Assembly: GCF_032062105.1 (NCBI RefSeq)
Contig: NW_026931824.1
Location: 310,001-374,000, forward strand
Direction: 5' to 3'
Length of the DNA stretch: 64,000 nt
Source: Saccostrea cucullata
Taxonomy: Eukaryota
Shown: one piece after another, positions 13,165 through 24,000 of the stretch
How positions within the stretch are numbered: the first letter of the stretch is position 1
Layout of the letters: each line of letters opens with the position of its first letter
Made by a program: the position numbers and the translations under genes
The notes under the pieces: model-generated
Told to the model about the DNA's origin: nothing
Seen by the model: only the letters and a program-made list of their open reading frames with translations
Databases searched by the model: none

Positions 13165-14592
13165 ATGAACGAAAAAGAAAAAAGAATAGTTCAACGTCTT
13201 CATTACAAATTAATTACGAACATACGGACAGAGGAAATTGCGCCACTGTTATACTCAAAAGAAGTTATAAGTGGCAATTTCTTAAGTGATATCCTCCATA
13301 AAAGTACCCCCAACGCCGAGAAAATGTCAGCTCTTTTGTTTGAGGTGTGTGATCGTTGTTCAATGCCGGACTTTGTTGAATGCTTGGACGAAGCAGGATA
13401 TGATTTTTGGGGGACAGAAATAAGGCTGTTGATAGAAAAACCTGATAGCTCTCTTCAGATTCGAAATTATGCCAGACAGTCTACCTCTCAAAATTCCTCT
13501 TTTGTGGATAGTTTTGCAGAAAAAGTAAAGTTTAAGATTCTTAATGCAGAGGCACGAAACTTCAAGTGTGATTTTAAACGCTGGGCCAAGCGGTTACTGT
13601 ATAGTCTGCGTCATGGCCGACTCTCTTTATCCGAGTCTCGTCTGCAAGCCGATTGTTGCTTTATACTGCTCGACTCTCTGGCTGTCATTGAGAGAACTCA
13701 CTCCTCAGACAAGGATAATCTCTGGAAATCACCGGTGTTTCCCGAAATGGAATATCTGATATCTAAAACTTCTAACCCTATTTCAAGTAGAATACGACAT
13801 CATGCTCGATACGGCGTCGCTCTTTTTCTTGGAGGTAAAGATGACGAAGGAGAAGAATATATTGAGGCAGCTCTGAAGGACGCCAAAACATTTCTACAAT
13901 CAGGTCGTGACATCGGAAACTGCATATTTGCACTGGTCAATTTTAAATTAAATCAATTCAGGAAAAGGAATGCCATGGATGGTAAACAAAACATTCTTAA
14001 TCTTATAGAAGATGGAATTGGGTATTTTCAGAACGAAGATGATGACACTAGAAATAATTGGCGAGGGGTGTATCTTGACAAGAAAATATCTTGCCATTTG
14101 GCTCTTGACCCTACAGGACGAGCTATTACTAATGTCCCGATTTCGAACGAAGATCTAAAGGTTGCCAAGGAATGTCTCTGTGAAATGGCCAATCTGAGTA
14201 GGAAAGACAAACGAAGAAAAATTCATTTTTATCGAGAACAAGCATGTTTGTGCGAAAGAGAATCAGAATTTTGGATTGCGAAAGGCTATCTATATCAGGC
14301 TTTGGAATTATGTAAGGAGGGAGGATATGAATCCGAATTGCACATTTTAGAACAAGAATTAGGAGAGCAAAGCTCTAATTTGACAATCAATGACAATGTT
14401 ACACCATGCATGACAGTAGATTTGACGTGGGACGATGGCTCCCAAAGTCCGGAGGAGGATCAGAATGGGGGTTGTTTATCAGAGACTGCTGCTTCACATG
14501 GCATATCAAACGCATGTATGTCAGAAATATCTCATAAATTAAAAATCGAAAACAATTCTTCAACAGAGAGTGATCTAGTAATGGATGGGTAA
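13165..14592 (+). CDS. Intronless protein with N-terminal CARD/death-fold-like domain, TPR-like alpha-helical core and acidic tail (paralog A, 475 aa)
   Basis: Uninterrupted 1.4-kb ORF in AT-rich DNA. Residues ~1-90 follow a CARD-like pattern (KLITNIRTEEIAPLLYSKEVIS...KMSALL...FVECLDEAGYDFWGTEI). The core has TPR-like helices (YGVALFLGGKDDEGEEYIEAALK; AKGYLYQALELCKEGGY). Clear homology to 15904-17400. The ORF call is firm; the domain call is pattern-based. Confidence 0.8.
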   Translation: MNEKEKRIVQRLHYKLITNIRTEEIAPLLYSKEVISGNFLSDILHKSTPNAEKMSALLFEVCDRCSMPDFVECLDEAGYDFWGTEIRLLIEKPDSSLQIRNYARQSTSQNSSFVDSFAEKVKFKILNAEARNFKCDFKRWAKRLLYSLRHGRLSLSESRLQADCCFILLDSLAVIERTHSSDKDNLWKSPVFPEMEYLISKTSNPISSRIRHHARYGVALFLGGKDDEGEEYIEAALKDAKTFLQSGRDIGNCIFALVNFKLNQFRKRNAMDGKQNILNLIEDGIGYFQNEDDDTRNNWRGVYLDKKISCHLALDPTGRAITNVPISNEDLKVAKECLCEMANLSRKDKRRKIHFYREQACLCERESEFWIAKGYLYQALELCKEGGYESELHILEQELGEQSSNLTINDNVTPCMTVDLTWDDGSQSPEEDQNGGCLSETAASHGISNACMSEISHKLKIENNSSTESDLVMDG

Positions 14593-15903
14593 ATAAACAT
14601 ATACTTATATTTGAGTTTATGTTAACTATAGTTCTAACTCATGGGGTATATATGTTGCTCTTTTAAATCAAATAACAGACATATGTCAAAATTTAAATAT
14701 CGAAAACAATACGCTTACATCTTTAAAAGATAGTGATGTTTTATTTGTTAAATGTTTTTAAAAATATTAATTTAATAATTTTTGGTATTATTTAATTAGT
14801 TATTAATCACAAATTAAAATTGGTATCGATAATAATGATTTTTTTTATATTTGTATAACTAAAACAGTTCTTCCAAAAGACACCAAAGTCAATGACCTTG
14901 TGACCTTGACTGTGACCTACAAGCTAAAAATAGCTTTATCGATTTTTTTCAATAACTTTAACCTATCTGTTTTATAAATAAAAAATTCCCATATTAAAAA
15001 ACATGTATTATGGGAAATTTTTATATACATAAAAAGATATGTTAAAAACTTCAAGCGCCTGTGCATCATTTTAAATTTTTAAAGATTAAGTATATAAATG
15101 TATACATTGTTAACGTTTACATTGTTTTTATTAATGTTTAATAATTACATGGTATAAGGGTGTTCTCTTTAACGCATAGTTTTATTATTCTCTTTGTTTA
15201 TATCTTATTTGCATAAATTGTTGAAAAAAAATTATTTTTATGTTAATATTCAAAAGTTGTTTGGTAAGTCTACATGTGTACCTTAAAAGCTTTAGAAGAG
15301 AGTGGCTGGCTGACTGTATGAATACATTTGAAAAAAATGAAAGAGATATAAAAGATTCTCAGATTTGATGCCTTTACCTAATACTAGTATTTCAAAGATA
15401 TCACCATAAGTTTCTTCAACACAAATGGTTCATCGCTATACATATGTAGCTATACAACAATTGAATGAAGAAAAACCGCAAGGCATAGCAGAGTAAGAAC
15501 TCAATATTTAACAGGAAAAAGAACTAGCGAATCCGGCCGACGCGTTGTTATCATAAAAAGGATTCTTACAGTAGTCTACTTATATTTCATTTATAAAAAA
15601 GAGCACGCCTTTATATCACTAACATGCAGTTGCGGAAAATAAACATCACACAAGGAGTTGGTATTTCCTGCGTTCAAGGCCAAATGCAGCTAAATACATG
15701 TATATCTTTCTATTGAACACTTGTATACTTTATGCAAGACAGTGCAAGTTAGTATGCAGACGACTTTCTGAATGGAAATATTTTTGAAAGGGATTATTAA
15801 AAAACATTCCGAACGGTATAAATACCAATGAGCTGTATTGTACTTTATTCGAAAAGTAAACATTATGTGGGACCGTTTTCTGTTATAATTTCGGATGTGA
15901 AAA

Positions 15904-17400
15904 ATGAATGACATAGAAAAAGGAATATTGCGTGGCTTTTATCCTATGTTTATAGCTACTATACGTGCGGAGTTAATTGCGCCATTGTTATACGCCAAGA
16001 AAATAATTAACTGGAAGCTGCTAAACAGAAGTTCCAGTAAGGATTTAACAAATGTCGCAAGAATCACGAGTCTGCTACGCAAGGTGAGACGACGATCTTC
16101 TATGGAGGACTTTTTGGAATGTCTGAACAAAGCAGGGTATGACTTTTGTTGTGAAGAAATAAAACAAAGTCTTCAAGTAAAACAAAATGAAAATAACCAG
16201 CTTTGTACTTTTACCAGACAGCCAGGCACTCAGAGTCTGTCTTTTGTTGATAGTTTTGCAGAGAAAGTAAAGGTAAAAATTCACAATTCTGAGGCACGAA
16301 ATTTCAAGTGTGATTTCTTAAGCTGGACAGAACGGCTTTTGAATCAGCAGGATCTAAGTCAGTGTTCTCTCTCCGAGACGCGTCAAAGAGCCGATTGCTG
16401 TTTTATACTGTTAGACTCTGTTGCAGTTATTGAGAGAACTCATTCAGCGGACATCGAAAATCTCTGGAAATCACCGGTATTTTCCCAAATGGAGAATCTG
16501 ATATCTAAAACCTCTAACCCTATATCAAGTAGAATACGACATCATGCTCGATACGGTGTCGCCCTTTTCCTGGGGGGTAAAGACGAAGAGGGAGAGGAAT
16601 ATATAGAGGCAGCTCTGAAGGACGCCAAAACATTCCTGCATTCAGGTCGTGATATCGGAAACTGCATGTTTGCACTGGTTAATTACAAACTTAAAAGATT
16701 CGCTAAAACAAAATCCGTTAAGGATAAAGAAGACATTTTGAAACTCACAGAAGAGGGGCTTGGTTATTTTCAGAATGAAGACGAGGGCATACGAAACACA
16801 TGGCGAAGAGTTTACCTTGACAAGAAAATATCATGTCATTTAGCCCTTGAACCTTCAGGACGAGTAATAGAGAATGTTGACATTTCAAGTGAGGACATGA
16901 AGGCAGCAAAAGAATGCCTCTGTGAAATGGATAAAGCAGTAGAAGTGATGGACAAAAGAAGGAAAGTCCATTTTTATCGAGCAAAAGCTCATCTTCACAA
17001 CCTGGAATCAAATTTTCGAATTGCAAAAGGTTATTTAGAAGAGGCTTTGGAATTATGCGTAGAGGGAGGGTACGAATCTGAGCTTTGTGCTATAAAAGAG
17101 GAACTAGGTGAACAAGCAACTCCGGTTACCCAGAGTGACACTGCCATGGATTTAGATTTGACGGAATATGCAGAGGGACATGCTGTAAAAGACGTCAATT
17201 TAATGAGTGAAATTCCTAGTTCTCTTCCTAAGACTAGTTCATCTATATCAACTCTCGTTAATAAATGTATCTCAGATTTATCAGGGAAACTAAACTTCAG
17301 TAATACTTTGATGCCCTCCTCAGTCAAGAGAAAGTTGGACACTGATGAACTTTATGCCAGATATAAGAAAGTAATTCACAGGAGCTCGTGCGATACGTGA
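15904..17400 (+). CDS. Intronless CARD/death-fold-like plus TPR-like protein (paralog B, 498 aa)
   Basis: Uninterrupted 1.5-kb ORF, collinear with paralog A, with long near-identical blocks (e.g. LISKTSNPISSRIRHHARYGVALFLGGKD). Ser-rich tail ending in a basic motif (KRKLD...RYKK). Confidence 0.8.
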   Translation: MNDIEKGILRGFYPMFIATIRAELIAPLLYAKKIINWKLLNRSSSKDLTNVARITSLLRKVRRRSSMEDFLECLNKAGYDFCCEEIKQSLQVKQNENNQLCTFTRQPGTQSLSFVDSFAEKVKVKIHNSEARNFKCDFLSWTERLLNQQDLSQCSLSETRQRADCCFILLDSVAVIERTHSADIENLWKSPVFSQMENLISKTSNPISSRIRHHARYGVALFLGGKDEEGEEYIEAALKDAKTFLHSGRDIGNCMFALVNYKLKRFAKTKSVKDKEDILKLTEEGLGYFQNEDEGIRNTWRRVYLDKKISCHLALEPSGRVIENVDISSEDMKAAKECLCEMDKAVEVMDKRRKVHFYRAKAHLHNLESNFRIAKGYLEEALELCVEGGYESELCAIKEELGEQATPVTQSDTAMDLDLTEYAEGHAVKDVNLMSEIPSSLPKTSSSISTLVNKCISDLSGKLNFSNTLMPSSVKRKLDTDELYARYKKVIHRSSCDT

Positions 17401-18090
17401 TACACAAGAAAAAAAAATTAACCTTCGAAAAAAATTAATATGAACAGAAAACTCGAAGTATGTGTTTTTCATTTGTGTCTGCAACCTCTTAAAATTAAAT
17501 AGTTCTTAATGCGGCTGTTAAATATCAGCGCATACATTATTTTCTGCATTCTACATCAATGAGAGTTCCTTTACATTAAAGAAGGTGTGGTTTTAGCTAT
17601 ATTGTGAGCTAAAAATGTAATGTCATAAAAAGGTTTTGAAACTGGCTTAAATATTAGTTAAGTGTATGACTGTGATAAATCGGGAAAAAATATGGCACAA
17701 AGGATTACTATTCTGAAAATATGACGTCATTAATGTGATGCATTTCTGTATTTTTAACAGAAAAAGCCTCAAATTAGCCAATTTCAAGGGGAATTTTCCT
17801 TTAGAAAATCGTGTCCACAGCTGTCGCCCACTTTAATTTTTTGACATATTGAGCAAAAAACAATTTTAAAAAATCACATCTCCAAATCTTTCTGGGCTAT
17901 GCCCGTAGACAATATTTTCTGAAAGAAAATTCCATTTAAAATTTCAGTATTTATTGCGAAATTAATTGTTCGTTTTCTACCGGTAATAGTCACTGTAACG
18001 CAAAGATTGTTTTTATCTATTTGTCGACACTACGGTCGTATTCAATAGATAAGACAGAAAATATTCCATGCGAAGAGCCGACAGAACACC

Positions 18091-21000
18091 ATGGCATTGC
18101 AGAGAAAAATCATTATACCGACATTGACAGGTTAAGTAATTGAAGAAATTATGACTTTTATCCAAAAGTAAGATTTCATACTGATACGAAGGTCAATAAT
18201 TCTTGCTTTTACATTGTCATTATTCAGTAGACACATTAGGTATGATATAACTTTGTCTATTTATTAATGATTCATGAATAACTATTTCGAAGACTTTATG
18301 ATCCTTCACATGTTCATGTATATTGTGTCTCAGTTGATGAAAAGTATCTTTCTAAATTTAATGATTTAACCATATATGAGATAATACATGTAACTTAACT
18401 TACTTTGAAGAATTCTGGATCTTGTATATTTTGTATAGGTTAAGATATGATACATATATTCGTATATTTCTTAATTCAATATTTTGACCTAATGATAATA
18501 AAAAAGTAATTTTGCTCTTTGTATTACTATTATTATTCACCTGGCTTGGTATAGTTTTCTAAAGTTTATATTACACTTTTGGCACCAAGGTAACATATTC
18601 TGAAATTTATTTTCACCTGTAAACCTTAACTGAGTGTAATATTACTAATATTTTCCAAGTTTATTTCATTTTCCAGTTCTTAGGAGAAAAAATGCTAAGA
18701 ATTATCTACATTTCTAAACTTGTGACATGATATTAAGACTATTCAAAAGAAAAAAATTGTTTGTATCATCTGTCCTTAAATTCATTTCTTAGTTCTGTCG
18801 TGCTTGATTGGATTTTTCGTTTCACCGACTGATGGCGCCCTACCTCCCAGCTGCACGCCTCTCGAAGAACACCCTTTGGACACAGCTGACCCAGGGATCA
18901 TATTTGGAAGAACCGCGGAGGTAGGGAACAAAGCGTCTCCGGTTAGGACCGGTAATATGCGTCAACATGGACCGCTTCCAACTCACCATTTTGCAACCAA
19001 TGAAATAAAGAATAACAAACCAATTCCAATGAGGCTGTTCCCTTATGAAGGCAGGTGAATTATTCTGAAAAATTGGGTGTAGCTACATATCAAATACGAG
19101 CTAAATTTCACAAATGAAATTTTTTTTCTCGAGTGATGAAGATGGGAAGGAACTTTTACCAATCTTTCAGCAATAATGAATTCCGCTGGTATTGTGTACG
19201 ACGCATATACAATGGACAGGTGGACAAATCCGGATCGAACGGATTTGATGATGCAGCAATCAGCATGGAAGTCTGGTGAGCCTTGGAACAAATTGACAGA
19301 CATGGGAACCAACATGCGACAAGTGGTAAGCGGTCCAGACGGGAATCCCGGAGGTGAATTCTCAGGTAAATATGACTAAAACACAGTATTGGTCGCATAT
19401 GCTGTTTCTACTAGATATTATCATCAAGTTTTCATCCATGTTCAGGTGAGTCCGGTGTCAGAGTAGGAATTTCCGGAAGTTCCGATCCGGTTTTGACAAG
19501 TTTTGGAGATCTGTACGCCAACTTTGAATATCATGGCAACGGAGGGAAAATGGAGGTATCGTATACCGTACTATTTTCTTTCGAATACAAGTAACATACG
19601 ATGTACATTGCAAAGACAATACATATTAAGGTGAAGATGTTCCACGCTTCAGGTGCCCTTGGTGCGTGGATCGGCCTTGCTGACCCATCTTTTCACTAAC
19701 GCCAATCCCGTTATTAAGCCTTTCTGTTTGTCCAACTTTGCAGGACACCATGTAAATTTCAACTGCCCTTTAGAAAGAACAGGTATGTAATGTCTGTATA
19801 TTTTTGCGACATACCTCTGTATAGAGACATAATTTATCTGATTATGTCCTAATTTTCATGAAGTATTGGATGCTGGAAGTGGGCATGCTAGCGCCACCTG
19901 CTCTGGTGGAACATTGCACCTAAGACTTCAAAACACCAAAAGAATCACAGATGTGACTAAGATACAGTTTGCTGCCAGACCGAAGGCTCGCTGGACTGCC
20001 GGGGATCACCCTATGACTAACTGTGATGCCAGAAAGTGTAGACTTTCTAGTGATGGAAAGATCCTGCAAATAGACGTGCCCAATGCTCATGGTTAGATTT
20101 CTTTTGACTATCATCTATGTCTTCCAACGTTTACAATCTATTGGAATTCCCATGGGTTCCATTTGCGCTCCGTTTTTAGCAGACCTATTTTTGTATTCAT
20201 ATGAAGCAGAATTTATGCAAAATCTTATGCGTGAAAAGAAGAAAACACTTGCCGTGGCCTTCAAATCGACTTTCAGCTATATCGATGACGTATTGTCAAT
20301 TAACAATGGTGATTTCCATTCCTACGTCGATACGATACACCCAAGAGAGCTTGAGATTAAAGACACGACAGAGTCTGACACATCTGTTTCATACTTGGAT
20401 ATTTTACTTTAAAAAGACGTTAATGGTAACTTAACAACCAAGCTGTATGATAAACGTGACGACTTTAACTTTTCTATCGTCAACTTCCCTTACTTATGCA
20501 GCAACATTCCTTCATCACCTGCATACAGAGTGTATACATCTCAGTTGATTCGATACGCAAGAGCATGCTCTACGTATAAACAATTTCTAAAACGAGGTAA
20601 ATTATTGACAAGCAAGTTGACGAAACAAGAATATCAACAGCCTCGTTTAAAGTCATCATTTCGTAAGTTCTATGGTCGATACAATGACCTTGTCAGCAAA
20701 TACAATTTATCATTGAGTCAAATGCTGACTGACGTTTTTCATACCAATTGTTAGTCCATTATTGATACACTGAATTGACGACGGATTTTCCCGTTATTTC
20801 CTGACAATGGTGACAAGGAGCACACGACGGGTGTGACCGGTAAGCAGGGGATGCTCACTCCTCCATGACACCTGATCCCACCTCTGATGTTTCGGAGGTC
20901 CGTGTTTGCTCTGCTCTTATTTTGTATTGTTTTATGGACTTTGAGATTGAATACTGTTCGTTGTCTCCATATCCTTCCTTATGCAAAACCATTAACAATG

Positions 21001-24000
21001 GTCCTTAGATTATTTAGGGATTTTGAAGTTAAGGTGCTCCATTGATCAATGTTGAAATGCGTTCATTCTTTGAAAATCTTGGGTATTTTCCGAAGAGAAA
21101 TTATGTACATAACTCTAATGAGCAAGAGTGCTTCTTCCGAACTTGTGAAATCCATGGAACACTTCATCGTGTCTTCTGGAGATGAGGGGGCTCTTTGTTG
21201 CTCAAGAGAAAATGTGTTATTTTTTAATAAAGATCTTCATATAGCTCTGCTCCCAGAATTTTTTAGCAGACAAAATAAATACATAACTATAATGCATGGC
21301 TTCCAAAATTGTGAAATTTTAGATCTTGTGGGTGAGAATTTTACTATTAGGACACGGAATTTTATGGGCATATTCTTGATTATATTAATTTTATCAAATT
21401 TGATCCAAACCCTCAAAACTAAATTTCTTGCCGTTTGCCTGTGTATGCCAAACTTGGTTGGCATTGGATTATAAATCATTGTATGAGTTCAAGCGGGTTC
21501 TGAGAGTGTATCGTATTCTTTATGCTGCTAGAATCTGCATGCTTGATAGAAACATTGCAAAATTTATATTTGCTATGTCAATATTTTGAGCAGGTGTTAT
21601 GGCGTTTGCTTTTAACTACGTTGGTCACTACGTCACTCCTTGGGATTGGATAAATCACCCGGAAGAAGTCACGTGTCATAGTCGACGCAGCGAAAAAAGA
21701 GCTGGGGGTCATATATCGTTACATGCATCGTGTGACTCCAACAGGAATCTGCAGCTTGATGTTGACCTTGGTCACTATAACATCCCAGGTGTTGACAAGG
21801 TTGTTTAAGCATGTACATTTTGATTACATTACTTGTATCCATTGACATGGCAGTAATTCAATGTAATGTTTTTCAGTTTAATATGTCAAAACAAAAATAA
21901 GGCTCAATATAAATATCAAATCTCCATTCATATTCGATTTTAAACTTTGAAAATGGCGATATTGCATGACCTTTAATAAGTAAAATGCTATCACTTATTT
22001 ATACCTTAATGGTCACTAACAGATTCAGTATGCTGTTGAGCCGGAGAATGCCTGGGGGAACCCCCCACCTATGCGCACCTGTAACCCCACCCTCTGTACC
22101 CACACCGGAAACACCGTCACTGTCAAACTGCGAGCACCTGCTCAGAACATTAAGTAAGGAGAAAGCAAAATATAGGCAAAAGTTTACATTCTAATCTTCT
22201 TATGCGACCGGAAACTCTCATTTAGCTGTAAGAAGTATATCTTCATGCTTTATCTATCGAAAAAAGGAAGTCACATGCAAACAGCATAATATGAAAATGT
22301 GTTATACTTTCTAAAGAGAAAACTTTTACATGTACTGTTTTTTTGTTTGCGACTTGAAATAATTGCTATGTGGGAGACTTCTAAGTTGAGGAAGTGTCTG
22401 TTTCTTACTTGAATATTGTACAATAAAAACAGTTTTTAATCATTTGATGATGATCTATTATCGAAATTCTAATGTAAGGAAAAAATTTCAATTTGAAACT
22501 GTGATTAAAAATTTAAAGTAATTAGTCTTCAATTGCTAGCAATGTTCCAATTTGCTTATAGACTTGCAGTCAACGTCATAGGTTACGTAACCCTTCCACA
22601 CTCTTACTGGATAGAACGCCCATATAGAATGGTCTGTGGGGGACCTGACTTAGGATCAACGGCTTCAGGTAATAAAGCTATGAAAACCGGAAACATATAC
22701 ATGTGTAAACAAGAGGTTGAGTTAATAAATGTGAAGACAGCAATGTAATGTAAGGGTTCTGTCTGAAAGAAATATGACTTTATTAAGAGTAGTACTCAAA
22801 CCATGTATGCAACTTGGTGTTTACCTTACATCACAATAGGAATTTTTTTATATCCTGCATTCAGGTGGAAGTCACGTGACTCCAGCCCCGACCCTACACT
22901 CCATCACCACACCCCCTCAACATCAGACACACTCACCTCACACGATTCGGACGACTGCCTCTTCCCGACCTCTAACCCAGGGGTCGAAGTTTATCATGGA
23001 ACTGAATGAACCAGGTGATGAATTACCAAACCAAACAAGAAAATTCTTACTGTATTTCCAAAGTCCAGTCACCCCGCACATCAACGAGGTCGACAATACA
23101 ATAATTTTTACTCCTTCAAACGGTGGTCATTACTCAGGATTCATGCAGCTAGCTTATTTAGGAGCGGGTCCAAGGGGAGATCACTCAAATGATACAGTTC
23201 TAGACAGGTATCTTGGGGTGTATTCCTATAAGCCTAAGGCGTCTTACTGCGTCAAGAATGACCGAGCATATGCCAGTTTTGATTGGAATCCCAACAACCA
23301 GTTTTCCTATCAGTCAGCAGGAACGCTTCTCATGATCACGATGCCACACCATGTATGTTAAAGCATTTTACGTACATATACATGTACGCTAGTATTTCAA
23401 AGGAAGTTTTGATAATGAAGAGACCATATTGACAAAGAAAACCTTCACTTCAAAATAAGTGACATTTAAATTATGATATGAAGGAGAATGTCTAAAAAAT
23501 ATTATCTTAATTTTTCATTGCAGGCATACATCTTAAAAGATCATTTTGCAGCAAATTTGCGGTCTACAGTCTATACGTTCAAGGGTTTTGAGGGAGCGAG
23601 CTGGTTATTAGACATGGAGGCACCACGTGCCGCTATGGAACCCGATCCTGCTGCTGTACAGGCTATAAAGGCCAACAACCAACATCTTCAGGTAGTTCTA
23701 GCCCTGGATTCCACAAACTAAGGTCAATGAAATAGTACCAATTATCTACCTTTTCGCCAATGCTACTAAGGTATTTGAAGGTCGTATTTTCTACCATCTA
23801 CTAGTAACATAAACATCCTTCATTGTTTTTAGAGATGGATTCATGCCTTTTTAGTCTATCTCATTTATCCTTTGTATGAAATTCTGCAAGCTATTGAGAC
23901 GATGGGTGCATCCTTTGTATACAATCCCTTTGATCCTTTACAGAACACACTGCAGGCTATAGAGATGGATTCATACTTTTGTAATCAATATCTTTGATTC

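What the first reader, a model, noticed from the sequence alone, without database searches (positions are those of the whole stretch)
13165..17400. Tandem pair of intronless CARD/death-fold + TPR-like genes of unrecognised family
Seen: two collinear single-exon ORFs (475 and 498 aa) in a region where every other gene is heavily spliced. Each has a ~90-aa CARD-like N-terminus, a ~290-aa helical core with TPR-like segments, no NACHT/NB-ARC P-loop or enzymatic motif that I can see, and a low-complexity tail. Known: death-fold plus TPR architectures act as sensor/adaptor scaffolds. Inference: an undescribed ligand-sensing adaptor family (NLR-like but without an NTPase) that could recruit a CARD caspase.
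Basis: partly seen in the sequence, partly recalled or inferred. Interest (0 to 1): 0.85.

Follow-up and report, generated by a model that had tools for sequence, protein, structure and literature searches.

The report
Mollusc CARD plus TPR adaptor gene pair
Two neighbouring intron-free genes in this bivalve genome encode proteins that join a caspase-recruitment domain (CARD) to a TPR-type helical repeat domain without any ATPase; they belong to a mollusc-wide family that no database has named and that probably acts in innate immunity or cell death.

Summary
ORF1 (13165-14592, 475 aa) and ORF2 (15904-17400, 498 aa) are the only ORFs over 161 aa in the 64-kb window. They are 58% identical and under purifying selection (dN/dS about 0.19). 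The N-terminal ~90 aa is a CARD: a family profile hits only CARDs in the PDB, with caspase-9 at 6e-10 and Apaf-1 at 7e-9. Residues ~113-405 fold with high confidence (pLDDT 92.7) into a 14-helix TPR-type solenoid. Its best structural matches are APPBP2 (Z 19.3), APC/C subunits, Rap/PlcR, LGN and MalT domain III. There is no Walker A motif and no beta sheet, so no NTPase. The tail is disordered and carries one conserved helix plus a KRK cluster, which ORF1 has lost.

The pair is not an orphan. At least 187 clusters at 50% identity exist across bivalves and two gastropod groups, all named "uncharacterized". The own genome holds about 17-20 single-frame copies, mostly in tandem arrays. A few members end in a tail-anchor helix, which is a MAVS-like topology.

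Transcription evidence is weak but present, and no splicing was seen. The sensor/adaptor function is inferred, not shown. I found no paper describing this architecture. The scan had also noted this same stretch from another reading (s1-731101).

The parts
13165..14592 (+). ORF1, single-frame gene for a 475-aa CARD-TPR-like protein with an acidic CARD
   Evidence: ORF list; 58% identical to ORF2; dN/dS 0.26 overall; RNA-library contigs at 13161-13343 and 13476-13803
13165..13440 (+). ORF1 CARD, aa 1-92: six helices with helix 1 kinked into 3-11 and 13-19; net charge -4, pI 5.1
   Evidence: phmmer against PDB gives caspase-9 CARD at E 2.4e-4 over aa 1-87; family N-terminal profile hits only CARDs, best 6.4e-10; AF2 helices; charge
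13441..13500 (+). ORF1 disordered linker, aa 93-112
   Evidence: pLDDT below 50 at aa 95-111; dN/dS about 1.1
13501..14379 (+). ORF1 TPR-type alpha-solenoid core, aa 113-405: 14 helices (7 hairpins) and one short beta-hairpin-like loop
   Evidence: core-only AF2 model with pLDDT 92.7 and pTM 0.90; VIA-align Z 19.3 to APPBP2, 19.0 to an APC/C TPR subunit, 17.3 to Rap, 16.7 to PlcR, 15.4 to MalT domain III; dN/dS 0.19, and 0.06 for aa 201-260
14380..14589 (+). ORF1 disordered acidic tail, with the conserved tail helix motif at aa 447-461 (14503-14547); the KRK cluster present in all orthologs is missing
   Evidence: pLDDT about 25 except about 83 at the helix; motif scan; alignment A1
14592..14597 (+). 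AATAAA poly(A) signal overlapping the ORF1 stop codon
   Evidence: pattern scan; sequence
14676..14760 (+). Relic second copy of the 3' coding end downstream of the ORF1 stop. It repeats 14522-14556 at 86% identity and still reads as the tail-helix motif followed by a short C-terminus, which indicates a ~154-bp duplication that remodelled the ORF1 tail
   Evidence: direct repeat D8; frame-1 translation
15817..15822 (+). TATAAA box 87 nt upstream of the ORF2 start codon
   Evidence: pattern scan; an RNA-library contig begins at 15868
15904..17400 (+). ORF2, single-frame gene for a 498-aa CARD-TPR-like protein with a basic CARD
   Evidence: ORF list; oligo-dT RNA-seq depth 1-5 over 16502-17456 in two runs, dropping to zero after 17456
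15904..16179 (+). ORF2 CARD, aa 1-92: net charge +6, pI 9.5; helix 4 alone carries +6
   Evidence: alignment with ORF1; charges per helix
16243..17124 (+). ORF2 TPR-type core, about aa 114-407
   Evidence: 72% aa identity to the ORF1 core; 85% nt identity over 300 nt (repeat D1)
17125..17397 (+). ORF2 tail with the conserved helix motif (aa 455-465, 17266-17298) and the KRK basic cluster (aa 475-477, 17326-17334)
   Evidence: motif scan; alignment A1

Best explanation
The two ORFs are functional, tandemly duplicated, single-exon genes of a mollusc-specific family with this layout: N-terminal CARD, a ~20-aa flexible linker, a seven-hairpin TPR-type solenoid, and a disordered tail with one conserved helix and a basic cluster.

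Shown: the domain architecture, the absence of any NTPase, purifying selection, the family's distribution and its tandem expansion.

Inferred: the proteins work as NTPase-free death-fold sensor/adaptors. This is the logic of AIM2-like receptors (death-fold domain plus a direct ligand-binding domain) rather than of NLRs. In this model the TPR groove binds a peptide, protein or small ligand. The conserved tail helix may occupy that groove in cis as an autoinhibitor. Ligand binding or clustering then frees or concentrates the CARD, which nucleates homotypic CARD-CARD assembly with a CARD-bearing partner (a caspase-2/9-like initiator caspase, Apaf-1, or an RLR-pathway CARD protein) in an immune or cell-death response.

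The CARD evolves fast and has repeatedly flipped charge over a conserved core. This suggests partner switching, pairing between paralogs, or escape from pathogen antagonists.
For: Architecture:
- CARD: caspase-9 CARD at E 2.4e-4 for ORF1 alone. The 42-member N-terminal profile hits 60 of 60 listed PDB chains that are CARDs or CARD-based designs, including caspase-9 at 6.4e-10, Apaf-1 at 6.9e-9 and RIG-I at 7.2e-9.
- Pfam CARD is found in 12 of 86 family members, with a best E of 1.2e-10.
- The AF2 model shows six helices with a kinked helix 1.
- Core: pLDDT 92.7 and pTM 0.90. The best structural neighbours are all ligand- or peptide-binding TPR scaffolds, with Z 15-19. The Atlas neighbours are sensor TPRs of bacterial LuxR/NB-ARC/BTAD/HTH regulators.
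- No Walker A motif in the pair or its orthologs, and no beta sheet.

Functional genes:
- dN/dS is 0.19 for the CARD, 0.19 for the core and 0.06 for the central core, with dS of 1 or more.

Immune-gene style evolution:
- At least 187 clusters, found only in molluscs among all 18 named clusters.
- About 17-20 single-frame copies in the own genome, in tandem arrays that include broken copies.
- CARD branches are 2-3 times longer than core branches, with three independent acidic-to-basic flips.

The tail helix has pLDDT about 83 within a tail of about 25 and is conserved in all orthologs.
Against: No binding partner, ligand, induction by infection or oligomerisation was tested. Expression in the runs examined is very low, and the reads differ from the window by 1-5%, so they may come from alleles. 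TPR solenoids are generic scaffolds, and Z 15-19 among helical repeats shows the fold, not the function (note). No single TPR family stands out. Docking of the tail helix is inferred from pLDDT only, because I could not inspect the coordinates. The KRK cluster could instead point to a nuclear role.
Confidence: 0.55

Rival explanations
1. The pair are soluble members of a MAVS-like adaptor superfamily in the RIG-I-like receptor pathway. Their CARD would dock onto RLR or MAVS CARDs and the TPR would recruit downstream factors, so the pair would modulate antiviral signalling, positively or negatively, rather than caspases.
For: The family CARD profile matches RIG-I (7.2e-9) and MDA5 (2.9e-7) CARDs almost as well as caspase-9 and Apaf-1. 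Seven of 86 members hit the RIG-I/MAVS-type Pfam CARD_2. About eight superfamily members, plus one copy in the own genome, end in a tail-anchor helix, which gives a CARD ... TM topology like MAVS. Such members occur in Haliotis and Patella. Abalone and Aplysia are reported to lack a recognisable MAVS (PMC11103948 highlights; PMC9334734).
Against: ORF1 and ORF2 have no hydrophobic stretch (best Kyte-Doolittle window 1.0-1.3). They have no TRAF2/3 or TRAF6 consensus motifs. The cloned oyster MAVS is described as CARD + Death domain + TM and is not obviously of this family (PMC5557890); it starts differently from every listed representative. The best CARD matches are the apoptosome CARDs.
Confidence: 0.2
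2. The proteins are decoy or inhibitor proteins. Like CARD-only proteins (ICEBERG/COP) or ARC, they would sequester a CARD partner and dampen caspase activation, with the TPR serving only as a stabilising or chaperone-binding scaffold.
For: There is no enzymatic or oligomerising NTPase module. Fast-evolving CARDs with charge flips would fit competitive binding at type I CARD interfaces. Bivalves have greatly expanded anti-apoptotic families (abstract of PMC8917759).
Against: A 290-aa core under strong purifying selection (dN/dS 0.06-0.19), conserved across molluscs, is more than a passive appendage. ICEBERG and CARD8 are among the weakest CARD matches.
Confidence: 0.15
3. The proteins have a nuclear scaffold or regulator role unrelated to cell death. 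The KRK...KR tail would be a nuclear localisation signal and the TPR would bind histones or chromatin proteins.
For: A conserved KRK cluster follows the tail helix in all orthologs except ORF1. Histone-binding TPRs (TSK/BRU1 at Z 16.9; sNASP at 13.6) are among the structural neighbours.
Against: ORF1 has lost the cluster yet stays under purifying selection. Other branches of the family are tail-anchored or have unrelated tails. The CARD is the most diagnostic domain, and its known roles are in death and immune signalling.
Confidence: 0.06
4. The ORFs are not real host genes: they are chance ORFs, decaying retrocopies, or cargo of a transposon or virus.
For: The genes are intronless and dispersed or in tandem copies, some of them broken. 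Interspersed repeats flank the genes at 12300-12870 and 14783-14973.
Against: dN/dS is 0.19-0.26 with saturated dS. Orthologs exist across bivalve orders and gastropods. There is no relative in 2.9 million viral contigs. No inverted or terminal repeats bracket the genes. Only one family member hit a transposon- or virus-type Pfam domain (a single zf-CCHC hit), and neither ORF1 nor ORF2 did.
Confidence: 0.03

Closest known systems
AIM2-like receptors (PYD + HIN) and other NTPase-free death-fold sensors
   Same: A death-fold effector domain is joined by a flexible linker directly to a ligand-binding domain, with no STAND NTPase. This is the best model for how the proteins may work: ligand-driven clustering or release of the death-fold domain.
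   Different: The death-fold subtype differs (CARD, not PYD) and the sensor fold is unrelated (TPR solenoid, not HIN OB-folds). There is no homology outside the death fold. This is a functional analogy only and was not tested.
Apaf-1 / CED-4 / animal NLRs with TPR or WD40 sensors (STAND family)
   Same: An N-terminal CARD whose closest sequence relatives are the caspase-9 and Apaf-1 CARDs, followed by a C-terminal repeat sensor. MalT domain III, the sensor TPR of a STAND protein, is a structural neighbour at Z 15.4.
   Different: The defining NB-ARC/NACHT NTPase is absent. There is no Walker A motif and the structure is all-alpha. The proteins are not members.
MAVS (including oyster CgMAVS, PMC5557890)
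   Same: An N-terminal CARD adaptor. Some superfamily members share the C-terminal tail-anchor topology.
   Different: The window pair has no TM helix, no proline-rich region and no TRAF motifs. The middle region is a folded TPR solenoid, whereas CgMAVS is described with a Death domain.
RRNPP receptors (Rap, NprR, PlcR, AimR) of Firmicutes and their phages
   Same: A small N-terminal helical effector domain followed by a TPR solenoid of similar size that binds a peptide ligand. They are strong structural neighbours: Rap at Z 17.3 and PlcR at Z 16.7, with NprR and AimR among the Foldseek hits.
   Different: They are bacterial or phage proteins, their effector is an HTH or three-helix bundle rather than a CARD, and sequence identity is only 6-13%. 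Fold resemblance only.
APPBP2, LGN/Pins, KLC and APC/C TPR subunits
   Same: The top structural matches over nearly the whole core, with 245-281 aligned residues and Z 16-19. All bind extended peptides in the concave groove, and several are autoinhibited by an intramolecular segment.
   Different: None has a death-fold domain. Sequence identity is 8-12%, and no Pfam TPR model reaches threshold on ORF1 or ORF2.
IFIT proteins (vertebrate antiviral TPR proteins in tandem arrays)
   Same: Similar size (~470-500 aa), TPR solenoid, tandem gene clusters, and a coding region essentially in one exon.
   Different: IFITs have no CARD. No IFIT structure appears among the top 50 VIA or the listed Foldseek matches. 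Rejected as a specific relative.

Membership tests
CARD (Pfam PF00619, death-fold superfamily) | Significant sequence similarity to bona fide CARDs over the whole ~85-90 aa domain | tested here: met
   ORF1 alone hits the caspase-9 CARD at E 2.4e-4 over aa 1-87. The N-terminal profile of 42 members hits caspase-9 at 6.4e-10, Apaf-1 at 6.9e-9, and RIG-I, MDA5, RAIDD, CED-4, BCL10, CARD9 and NOD1; every listed hit is a CARD. Pfam CARD exceeds its gathering score in P0024 (41.7 bits) and P0056 (36.6 bits). ORF1 and ORF2 themselves gave no Pfam CARD hit.
CARD (Pfam PF00619, death-fold superfamily) | Six-helix antiparallel bundle with helix 1 broken into 1a and 1b | tested here: met
   AF2 model helices 3-11 / 13-19, 22-31, 37-45, 50-64, 67-76 and 80-91, with pLDDT 77-94.
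CARD (Pfam PF00619, death-fold superfamily) | Homotypic CARD-CARD binding or filament formation | not testable with these tools
   Needs Y2H, co-IP, filament assays or multimer modelling.
TPR repeat proteins | Tandem helix-turn-helix hairpins forming a superhelical solenoid | tested here: met
   14 helices with pLDDT 92.7. Z 19.3 to APPBP2, 19.0 to an APC/C subunit, 16.5 to LGN and 16.1 to BtubC, with 224-281 aligned residues. Foldseek probability 1.00 to KLC1, LGN and NprR TPRs.
TPR repeat proteins | The 34-residue TPR sequence consensus, detectable by Pfam TPR models | tested here: not met
   ORF1 has no hit. ORF2 hits only TPR_2 at E = 8. Only 4 of 86 family members hit TPR_2 and 2 hit TPR_12 at E of 0.01 or less. 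I therefore call it 'TPR-like' or 'TPR-type'.
NLR / STAND (Apaf-1, NOD-like receptors) | Central NACHT or NB-ARC NTPase with a Walker A P-loop and an alpha/beta fold | tested here: not met
   No [AG]xxxxGK[ST] in the pair or in 8 orthologs. Only one chance match to the stricter GxxxxGK[ST] in 102 superfamily members. The model has helices only apart from one short hairpin. No NB-ARC or NACHT Pfam hit.
MAVS | C-terminal transmembrane tail anchor | tested here: not met
   The best 19-residue Kyte-Doolittle window is 1.04 (ORF1) and 1.27 (ORF2), and neither is C-terminal. The feature is met by other superfamily members: P0041, P0049, P0056, P0061, P0116, P0135, P0136, P0152 and L008.
MAVS | TRAF-binding motifs in the region after the CARD | tested here: not met
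   No PxQx[TS] or PxExx[aromatic/acidic] motif in the pair or in 8 orthologs.
MAVS | Homology to the cloned mollusc MAVS (CgMAVS, KY630189) | not tested
   The sequence is available only as printed text in a supplement and has no reference usable in the tools. The paper describes it as CARD + Death + TM.
IFIT | IFIT-type TPR superhelix as nearest structural relative, with no other domain | tested here: not met
   No IFIT chain among the top 50 VIA or the listed Foldseek matches. A CARD is present.

The most novel reading that the evidence does not exclude
The CARD-TPR superfamily would be a mollusc-specific class of NTPase-free intracellular sensors. Its TPR grooves would read pathogen or danger ligands, and its CARDs would seed signalling filaments. 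Its tail-anchored branch would be the 'missing' MAVS-type adaptor of gastropods such as abalone and limpets. Within this reading, the window's acidic-CARD and basic-CARD paralogs would form a heterotypic CARD pair, a two-component switch that arose repeatedly by charge flipping after duplication.
Probability: 0.15. Interest if true: 0.85.

Novelty: new variant of a known kind. Interest (0 to 1): 0.6.

Why it matters
Death-fold adaptors are the wiring of animal cell-death and innate-immune pathways. In the best-studied animals, CARD-bearing sensors such as Apaf-1 and the NOD-like receptors use a STAND NTPase as the switch. A conserved and expanded family that joins a CARD directly to a TPR sensor-type domain, with no NTPase, would be a different design for an intracellular sensor or adaptor.

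The family occurs in animals (oysters, mussels, clams, abalone) where disease is economically important and where the RLR/MAVS and apoptosome pathways are only partly mapped. Some gastropods are reported to lack MAVS altogether.

The family is currently invisible to annotation. The core has no Pfam model and every public name is 'uncharacterized', so it is missed in immunome surveys and in differential-expression studies. The pair in this window is a compact test case: two single-exon genes with oppositely charged CARDs on a conserved core, easy to clone.

Tried and rejected
- Pfam on the two ORFs gave nothing useful: no hit for ORF1 and TPR_2 at E = 8 for ORF2.
- Foldseek of the full-length and core models against the PDB gave only generic TPR hits with E above 1e-3. 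VIA-align gave higher Z scores, but no single family stands out.
- IFIT-like effector: rejected, because no IFIT appears among the structural neighbours and a CARD is present.
- NLR-like: rejected, because there is no NTPase.
- Viral or transposon origin: no relative in the viral contigs and no bracketing repeats.
- An ancient acidic/basic CARD pair with cores homogenised by gene conversion: the CARD-only tree does not group the basic CARDs, so I prefer repeated charge flips. The lower dS in the central core (0.53 against 1.5-2.3) leaves limited local conversion possible.
- Literature: no paper mentions LOC105318728 / XP_011414271. None of the phrases 'CARD-TPR', 'TPR-CARD', 'CARD and TPR' or 'Death-TPR' occurs in the library. 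Surveys of bivalve death-fold and NLR genes describe NACHT-TPR proteins, but not CARD-TPR without an NTPase.
- Membership of CgMAVS could not be tested, because its sequence exists only as printed text with no reference. I left that step out rather than typing it in.
- Long C-terminal extensions of the larger members (up to 1041 aa) have no Pfam domain.
- The words search of earlier findings returned nothing.

Full report
**Observation.** The window averages about 33% G+C. Apart from one 161-aa frame, no other ORF in the 64 kb reaches 150 aa, so these frames are far beyond chance. The two proteins are 58% identical over 471 residues.

A codon-level comparison gives dN/dS of 0.19 for residues 1-92. 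It gives 0.19 for 113-400, and 0.06 for 201-260 within that stretch. It gives about 1.1 for the 20-residue linker and 0.48 for the tail, with dS of 1 or more. Both copies have therefore been kept by selection since an old duplication. In a tree of the close subfamily, ORF1 and ORF2 are sisters (support 91/88) and lie next to two orthologs from other taxa.

**N-terminal domain.**
- ORF1 alone matches the caspase-9 CARD in the PDB over residues 1-87, at E 2.4e-4.
- A profile of the N-terminal 95 residues of 42 diverse family members hits only CARDs. These are caspase-9 (6.4e-10), Apaf-1 (6.9e-9), RIG-I (7.2e-9), MDA5, RAIDD, CED-4, BCL10, CARD9, ASC and NOD1.
- Pfam CARD is found in 12 of 86 members and CARD_2 in 7. 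CARD exceeds its gathering score in P0024 and P0056.
- ORF1 and ORF2 themselves are too divergent for the Pfam model.
- The AlphaFold model shows six helices with helix 1 broken at residue 12, which is the CARD signature.

I regard CARD membership as established at the sequence and predicted-fold level. Homotypic binding was not testable here.

**Core.** Residues ~113-405 have no Pfam family. Folded alone with an 86-sequence alignment, they give a very confident model (pLDDT 92.7, pTM 0.90). It has 14 helices in seven hairpins, with one short beta-hairpin-like loop.

An exhaustive structural comparison ranks these matches highest:
- APPBP2, Z 19.3 with 281 aligned residues
- an APC/C TPR subunit, Z 19.0
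- phage Rap, Z 17.3
- TSK/BRU1, Z 16.9
- PlcR, Z 16.7
- LGN, Z 16.5
- MalT domain III, Z 15.4

Foldseek gives the same families with probability 1.00 but E values no better than about 2e-3. Atlas neighbours outside the family are sensor TPRs of bacterial LuxR, NB-ARC, BTAD and HTH regulators. So this is a TPR-type solenoid of the ligand- or peptide-binding kind, with no identifiable parent family. Because the Pfam TPR consensus is not met, 'TPR-like' is the accurate label. There is no Walker A motif and no alpha/beta NTPase fold, so the proteins are not NLR/STAND members.

**Tail.** The last 70-95 residues are disordered and rich in Ser, Asp, Glu and Asn. They contain one helix with a motif conserved in all close orthologs (C-[IVM]-[ST]-[DE]-[IL]-[ST]-x-K-L-[NK]-[IF]). 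A KRK cluster follows about 8-10 residues later.

The helix has pLDDT about 83 amid residues at about 25. I take this as a hint that it packs on the core; that is inference, since I could not view the coordinates.

ORF1 is the only member that lacks the KRK cluster. Downstream of its stop lies a second, decayed copy of the 3' coding end (14676-14760; repeat D8; translation). A ~154-bp duplication therefore remodelled its C-terminus.

**Gene structure and transcription.** Two oligo-dT RNA-seq runs of the same species label cover the 3' half of ORF2 (16502-17456) at depth 1-5, and coverage stops just after the stop codon. ORF1 has only about 1x coverage over 13446-13827. Contigs from RNA libraries cover 13161-13343, 13476-13803, 15868-16011 and 16147-16266. 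No splice joints were reported.

ORF2 has a TATAAA at 15817, 87 nt before its ATG, and an ATTAAA at 17494. ORF1 has an AATAAA overlapping its stop codon. This fits short, unspliced transcripts.

The depth is low, the reads differ from the window by 1-5% (probably alleles), and RNA libraries can carry DNA. I therefore call transcription supported but weak. Indirect support comes from the orthologs. Their exact proteins recur on up to hundreds of Logan assemblies of public runs. Examples are 172 and 335 member sequences for two clusters, and nine contigs for the Crassostrea gigas ortholog, always as one uninterrupted frame.

**Family.** A profile search of 1.84 billion representatives finds 187 clusters at E of 0.001 or less and 108 at 1e-10 or less. 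Of 30 clusters looked up, 18 carry a public name. All 18 are molluscan and all are called 'uncharacterized' or 'hypothetical':
- Crassostrea gigas (LOC105318728) and C. virginica
- Pinctada
- Mytilus
- Mizuhopecten
- Ruditapes, Mactra, Dreissena and Mya
- Sinanodonta
- the gastropods Patella and Haliotis

Nearly all full-length members start with the same CARD-type N-terminus.

The own genome (1.17 Gb) has about 17-20 copies that match the whole profile in a single open frame, plus fragments and copies with stop codons. Most lie in tandem clusters, for example six or more on contig C12024. A third, closer paralog (38% identity) lies on C22507 and represents a second conserved subfamily.

C-termini vary between branches:
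- the helix plus KRK tail of the window's subfamily
- long extensions without Pfam domains, up to 1041 aa
- a hydrophobic helix ending 0-10 residues from the C-terminus in about eight representatives and one own-genome copy, which looks like a tail anchor

No relative exists in the viral contig collection, and no terminal repeats bracket the genes.

**CARD evolution.** The ORF1 CARD is acidic (net -4, pI 5.1) and the ORF2 CARD is basic (net +6, pI 9.5). The difference is concentrated in helix 4. The same dichotomy occurs among the orthologs. In a CARD-only tree the basic CARDs do not group together, so the flips arose at least three times. CARD terminal branches are 2-3 times longer than those of the core.

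I confirm the charge switch and the faster CARD. The core, however, is 72% identical overall rather than near-identical; only residues 201-260 reach 93%.

**Interpretation.** What is shown is an architecture: CARD, linker, TPR-type solenoid and a tail with a conserved helix, with no NTPase. It is under purifying selection and has expanded in tandem arrays across molluscs.

What is inferred is the mechanism. I think the most likely one is an NTPase-free sensor/adaptor, comparable in logic to AIM2-like receptors. The TPR groove would bind a ligand or partner, possibly in competition with the tail helix. The CARD would then engage a CARD-bearing partner. The closest CARDs are those of the apoptosome, but RLR CARDs score nearly as well, so the pathway is open.

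Three rivals remain: an RLR/MAVS-pathway role (suggested by the tail-anchored relatives), a decoy/inhibitor role, and a nuclear role (suggested by the KRK cluster). A non-genic or mobile-element origin is effectively excluded.

**Comparison with the literature.**
- I found no paper mentioning the oyster ortholog or the architecture by name.
- Surveys describe NACHT proteins with Death domains and TPR or WD40 repeats in pearl oyster (PMC9646362).
- They also describe large lineage-specific expansions of death-fold and TRADD-N adaptors in bivalves (PMC8195603).
- The cloned oyster MAVS is CARD + Death + TM (PMC5557890).
- MAVS is reported as undetectable in Aplysia (PMC9334734) and in abalone (PMC11103948, highlights).

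The tail-anchored CARD-TPR-like proteins of Haliotis and Patella are therefore a lead worth following. I could not test whether CgMAVS itself belongs to this family, because its sequence has no reference usable in the tools.

**Verdict.** The structural reading is supported and the functional reading is plausible but untested. The sequences are public but undescribed. I class this as a new variant of a known kind: a death-fold adaptor with a direct TPR sensor module and no NTPase.

Noticed in passing
superfamily members P0041 (Patella caerulea), P0056 (Haliotis rubra), P0049 (Crassostrea virginica), P0116 (Mytilus californianus), P0061, P0135, P0136, P0152; own genome L008 (G000:C12024, about 500.8-502.0 kb): These members of the CARD-TPR-like superfamily end in a strongly hydrophobic helix 0-10 residues from the C-terminus. 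That gives a CARD ... tail-anchor topology like MAVS, including in gastropod lineages where MAVS is reported missing.
   Followed up: partly
window 14676-14760: A decayed second copy of the ORF1 3' coding end lies 84 nt past the stop codon. It indicates a ~154-bp duplication that gave ORF1 a new, shorter C-terminus without the KRK cluster.
   Followed up: yes
window 12300-12870 and 14783-14973: Two stretches have very high summed contig depth in RNA libraries (hundreds to thousands) and many loose ends running into unrelated sequence. They are interspersed repeats flanking and separating the two genes, and were not classified.
   Followed up: no
window 10731-12220: A patch of degenerate direct repeats: 44-82 nt units, four copies of D3 spaced 77-146 nt apart, plus D4, D5 and D9. 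It lies upstream of ORF1 and is probably part of a repeat element.
   Followed up: no
G000:C12024:493.9-524.9 kb: A tandem array of at least six family copies within about 31 kb. Several have internal stop codons or are split between frames, which suggests birth-and-death turnover in the family.
   Followed up: partly
window 17031-17342 (- strand): A 103-aa GTG-initiated ORF lies antisense inside ORF2. It is most likely a by-product of the sense frame and has no separate support.
   Followed up: no
window 18091-27463: Other first-stage notes place a multi-exon GH81 glucanase gene immediately downstream of ORF2. I did not examine it, and nothing links it functionally to the pair.
   Followed up: no
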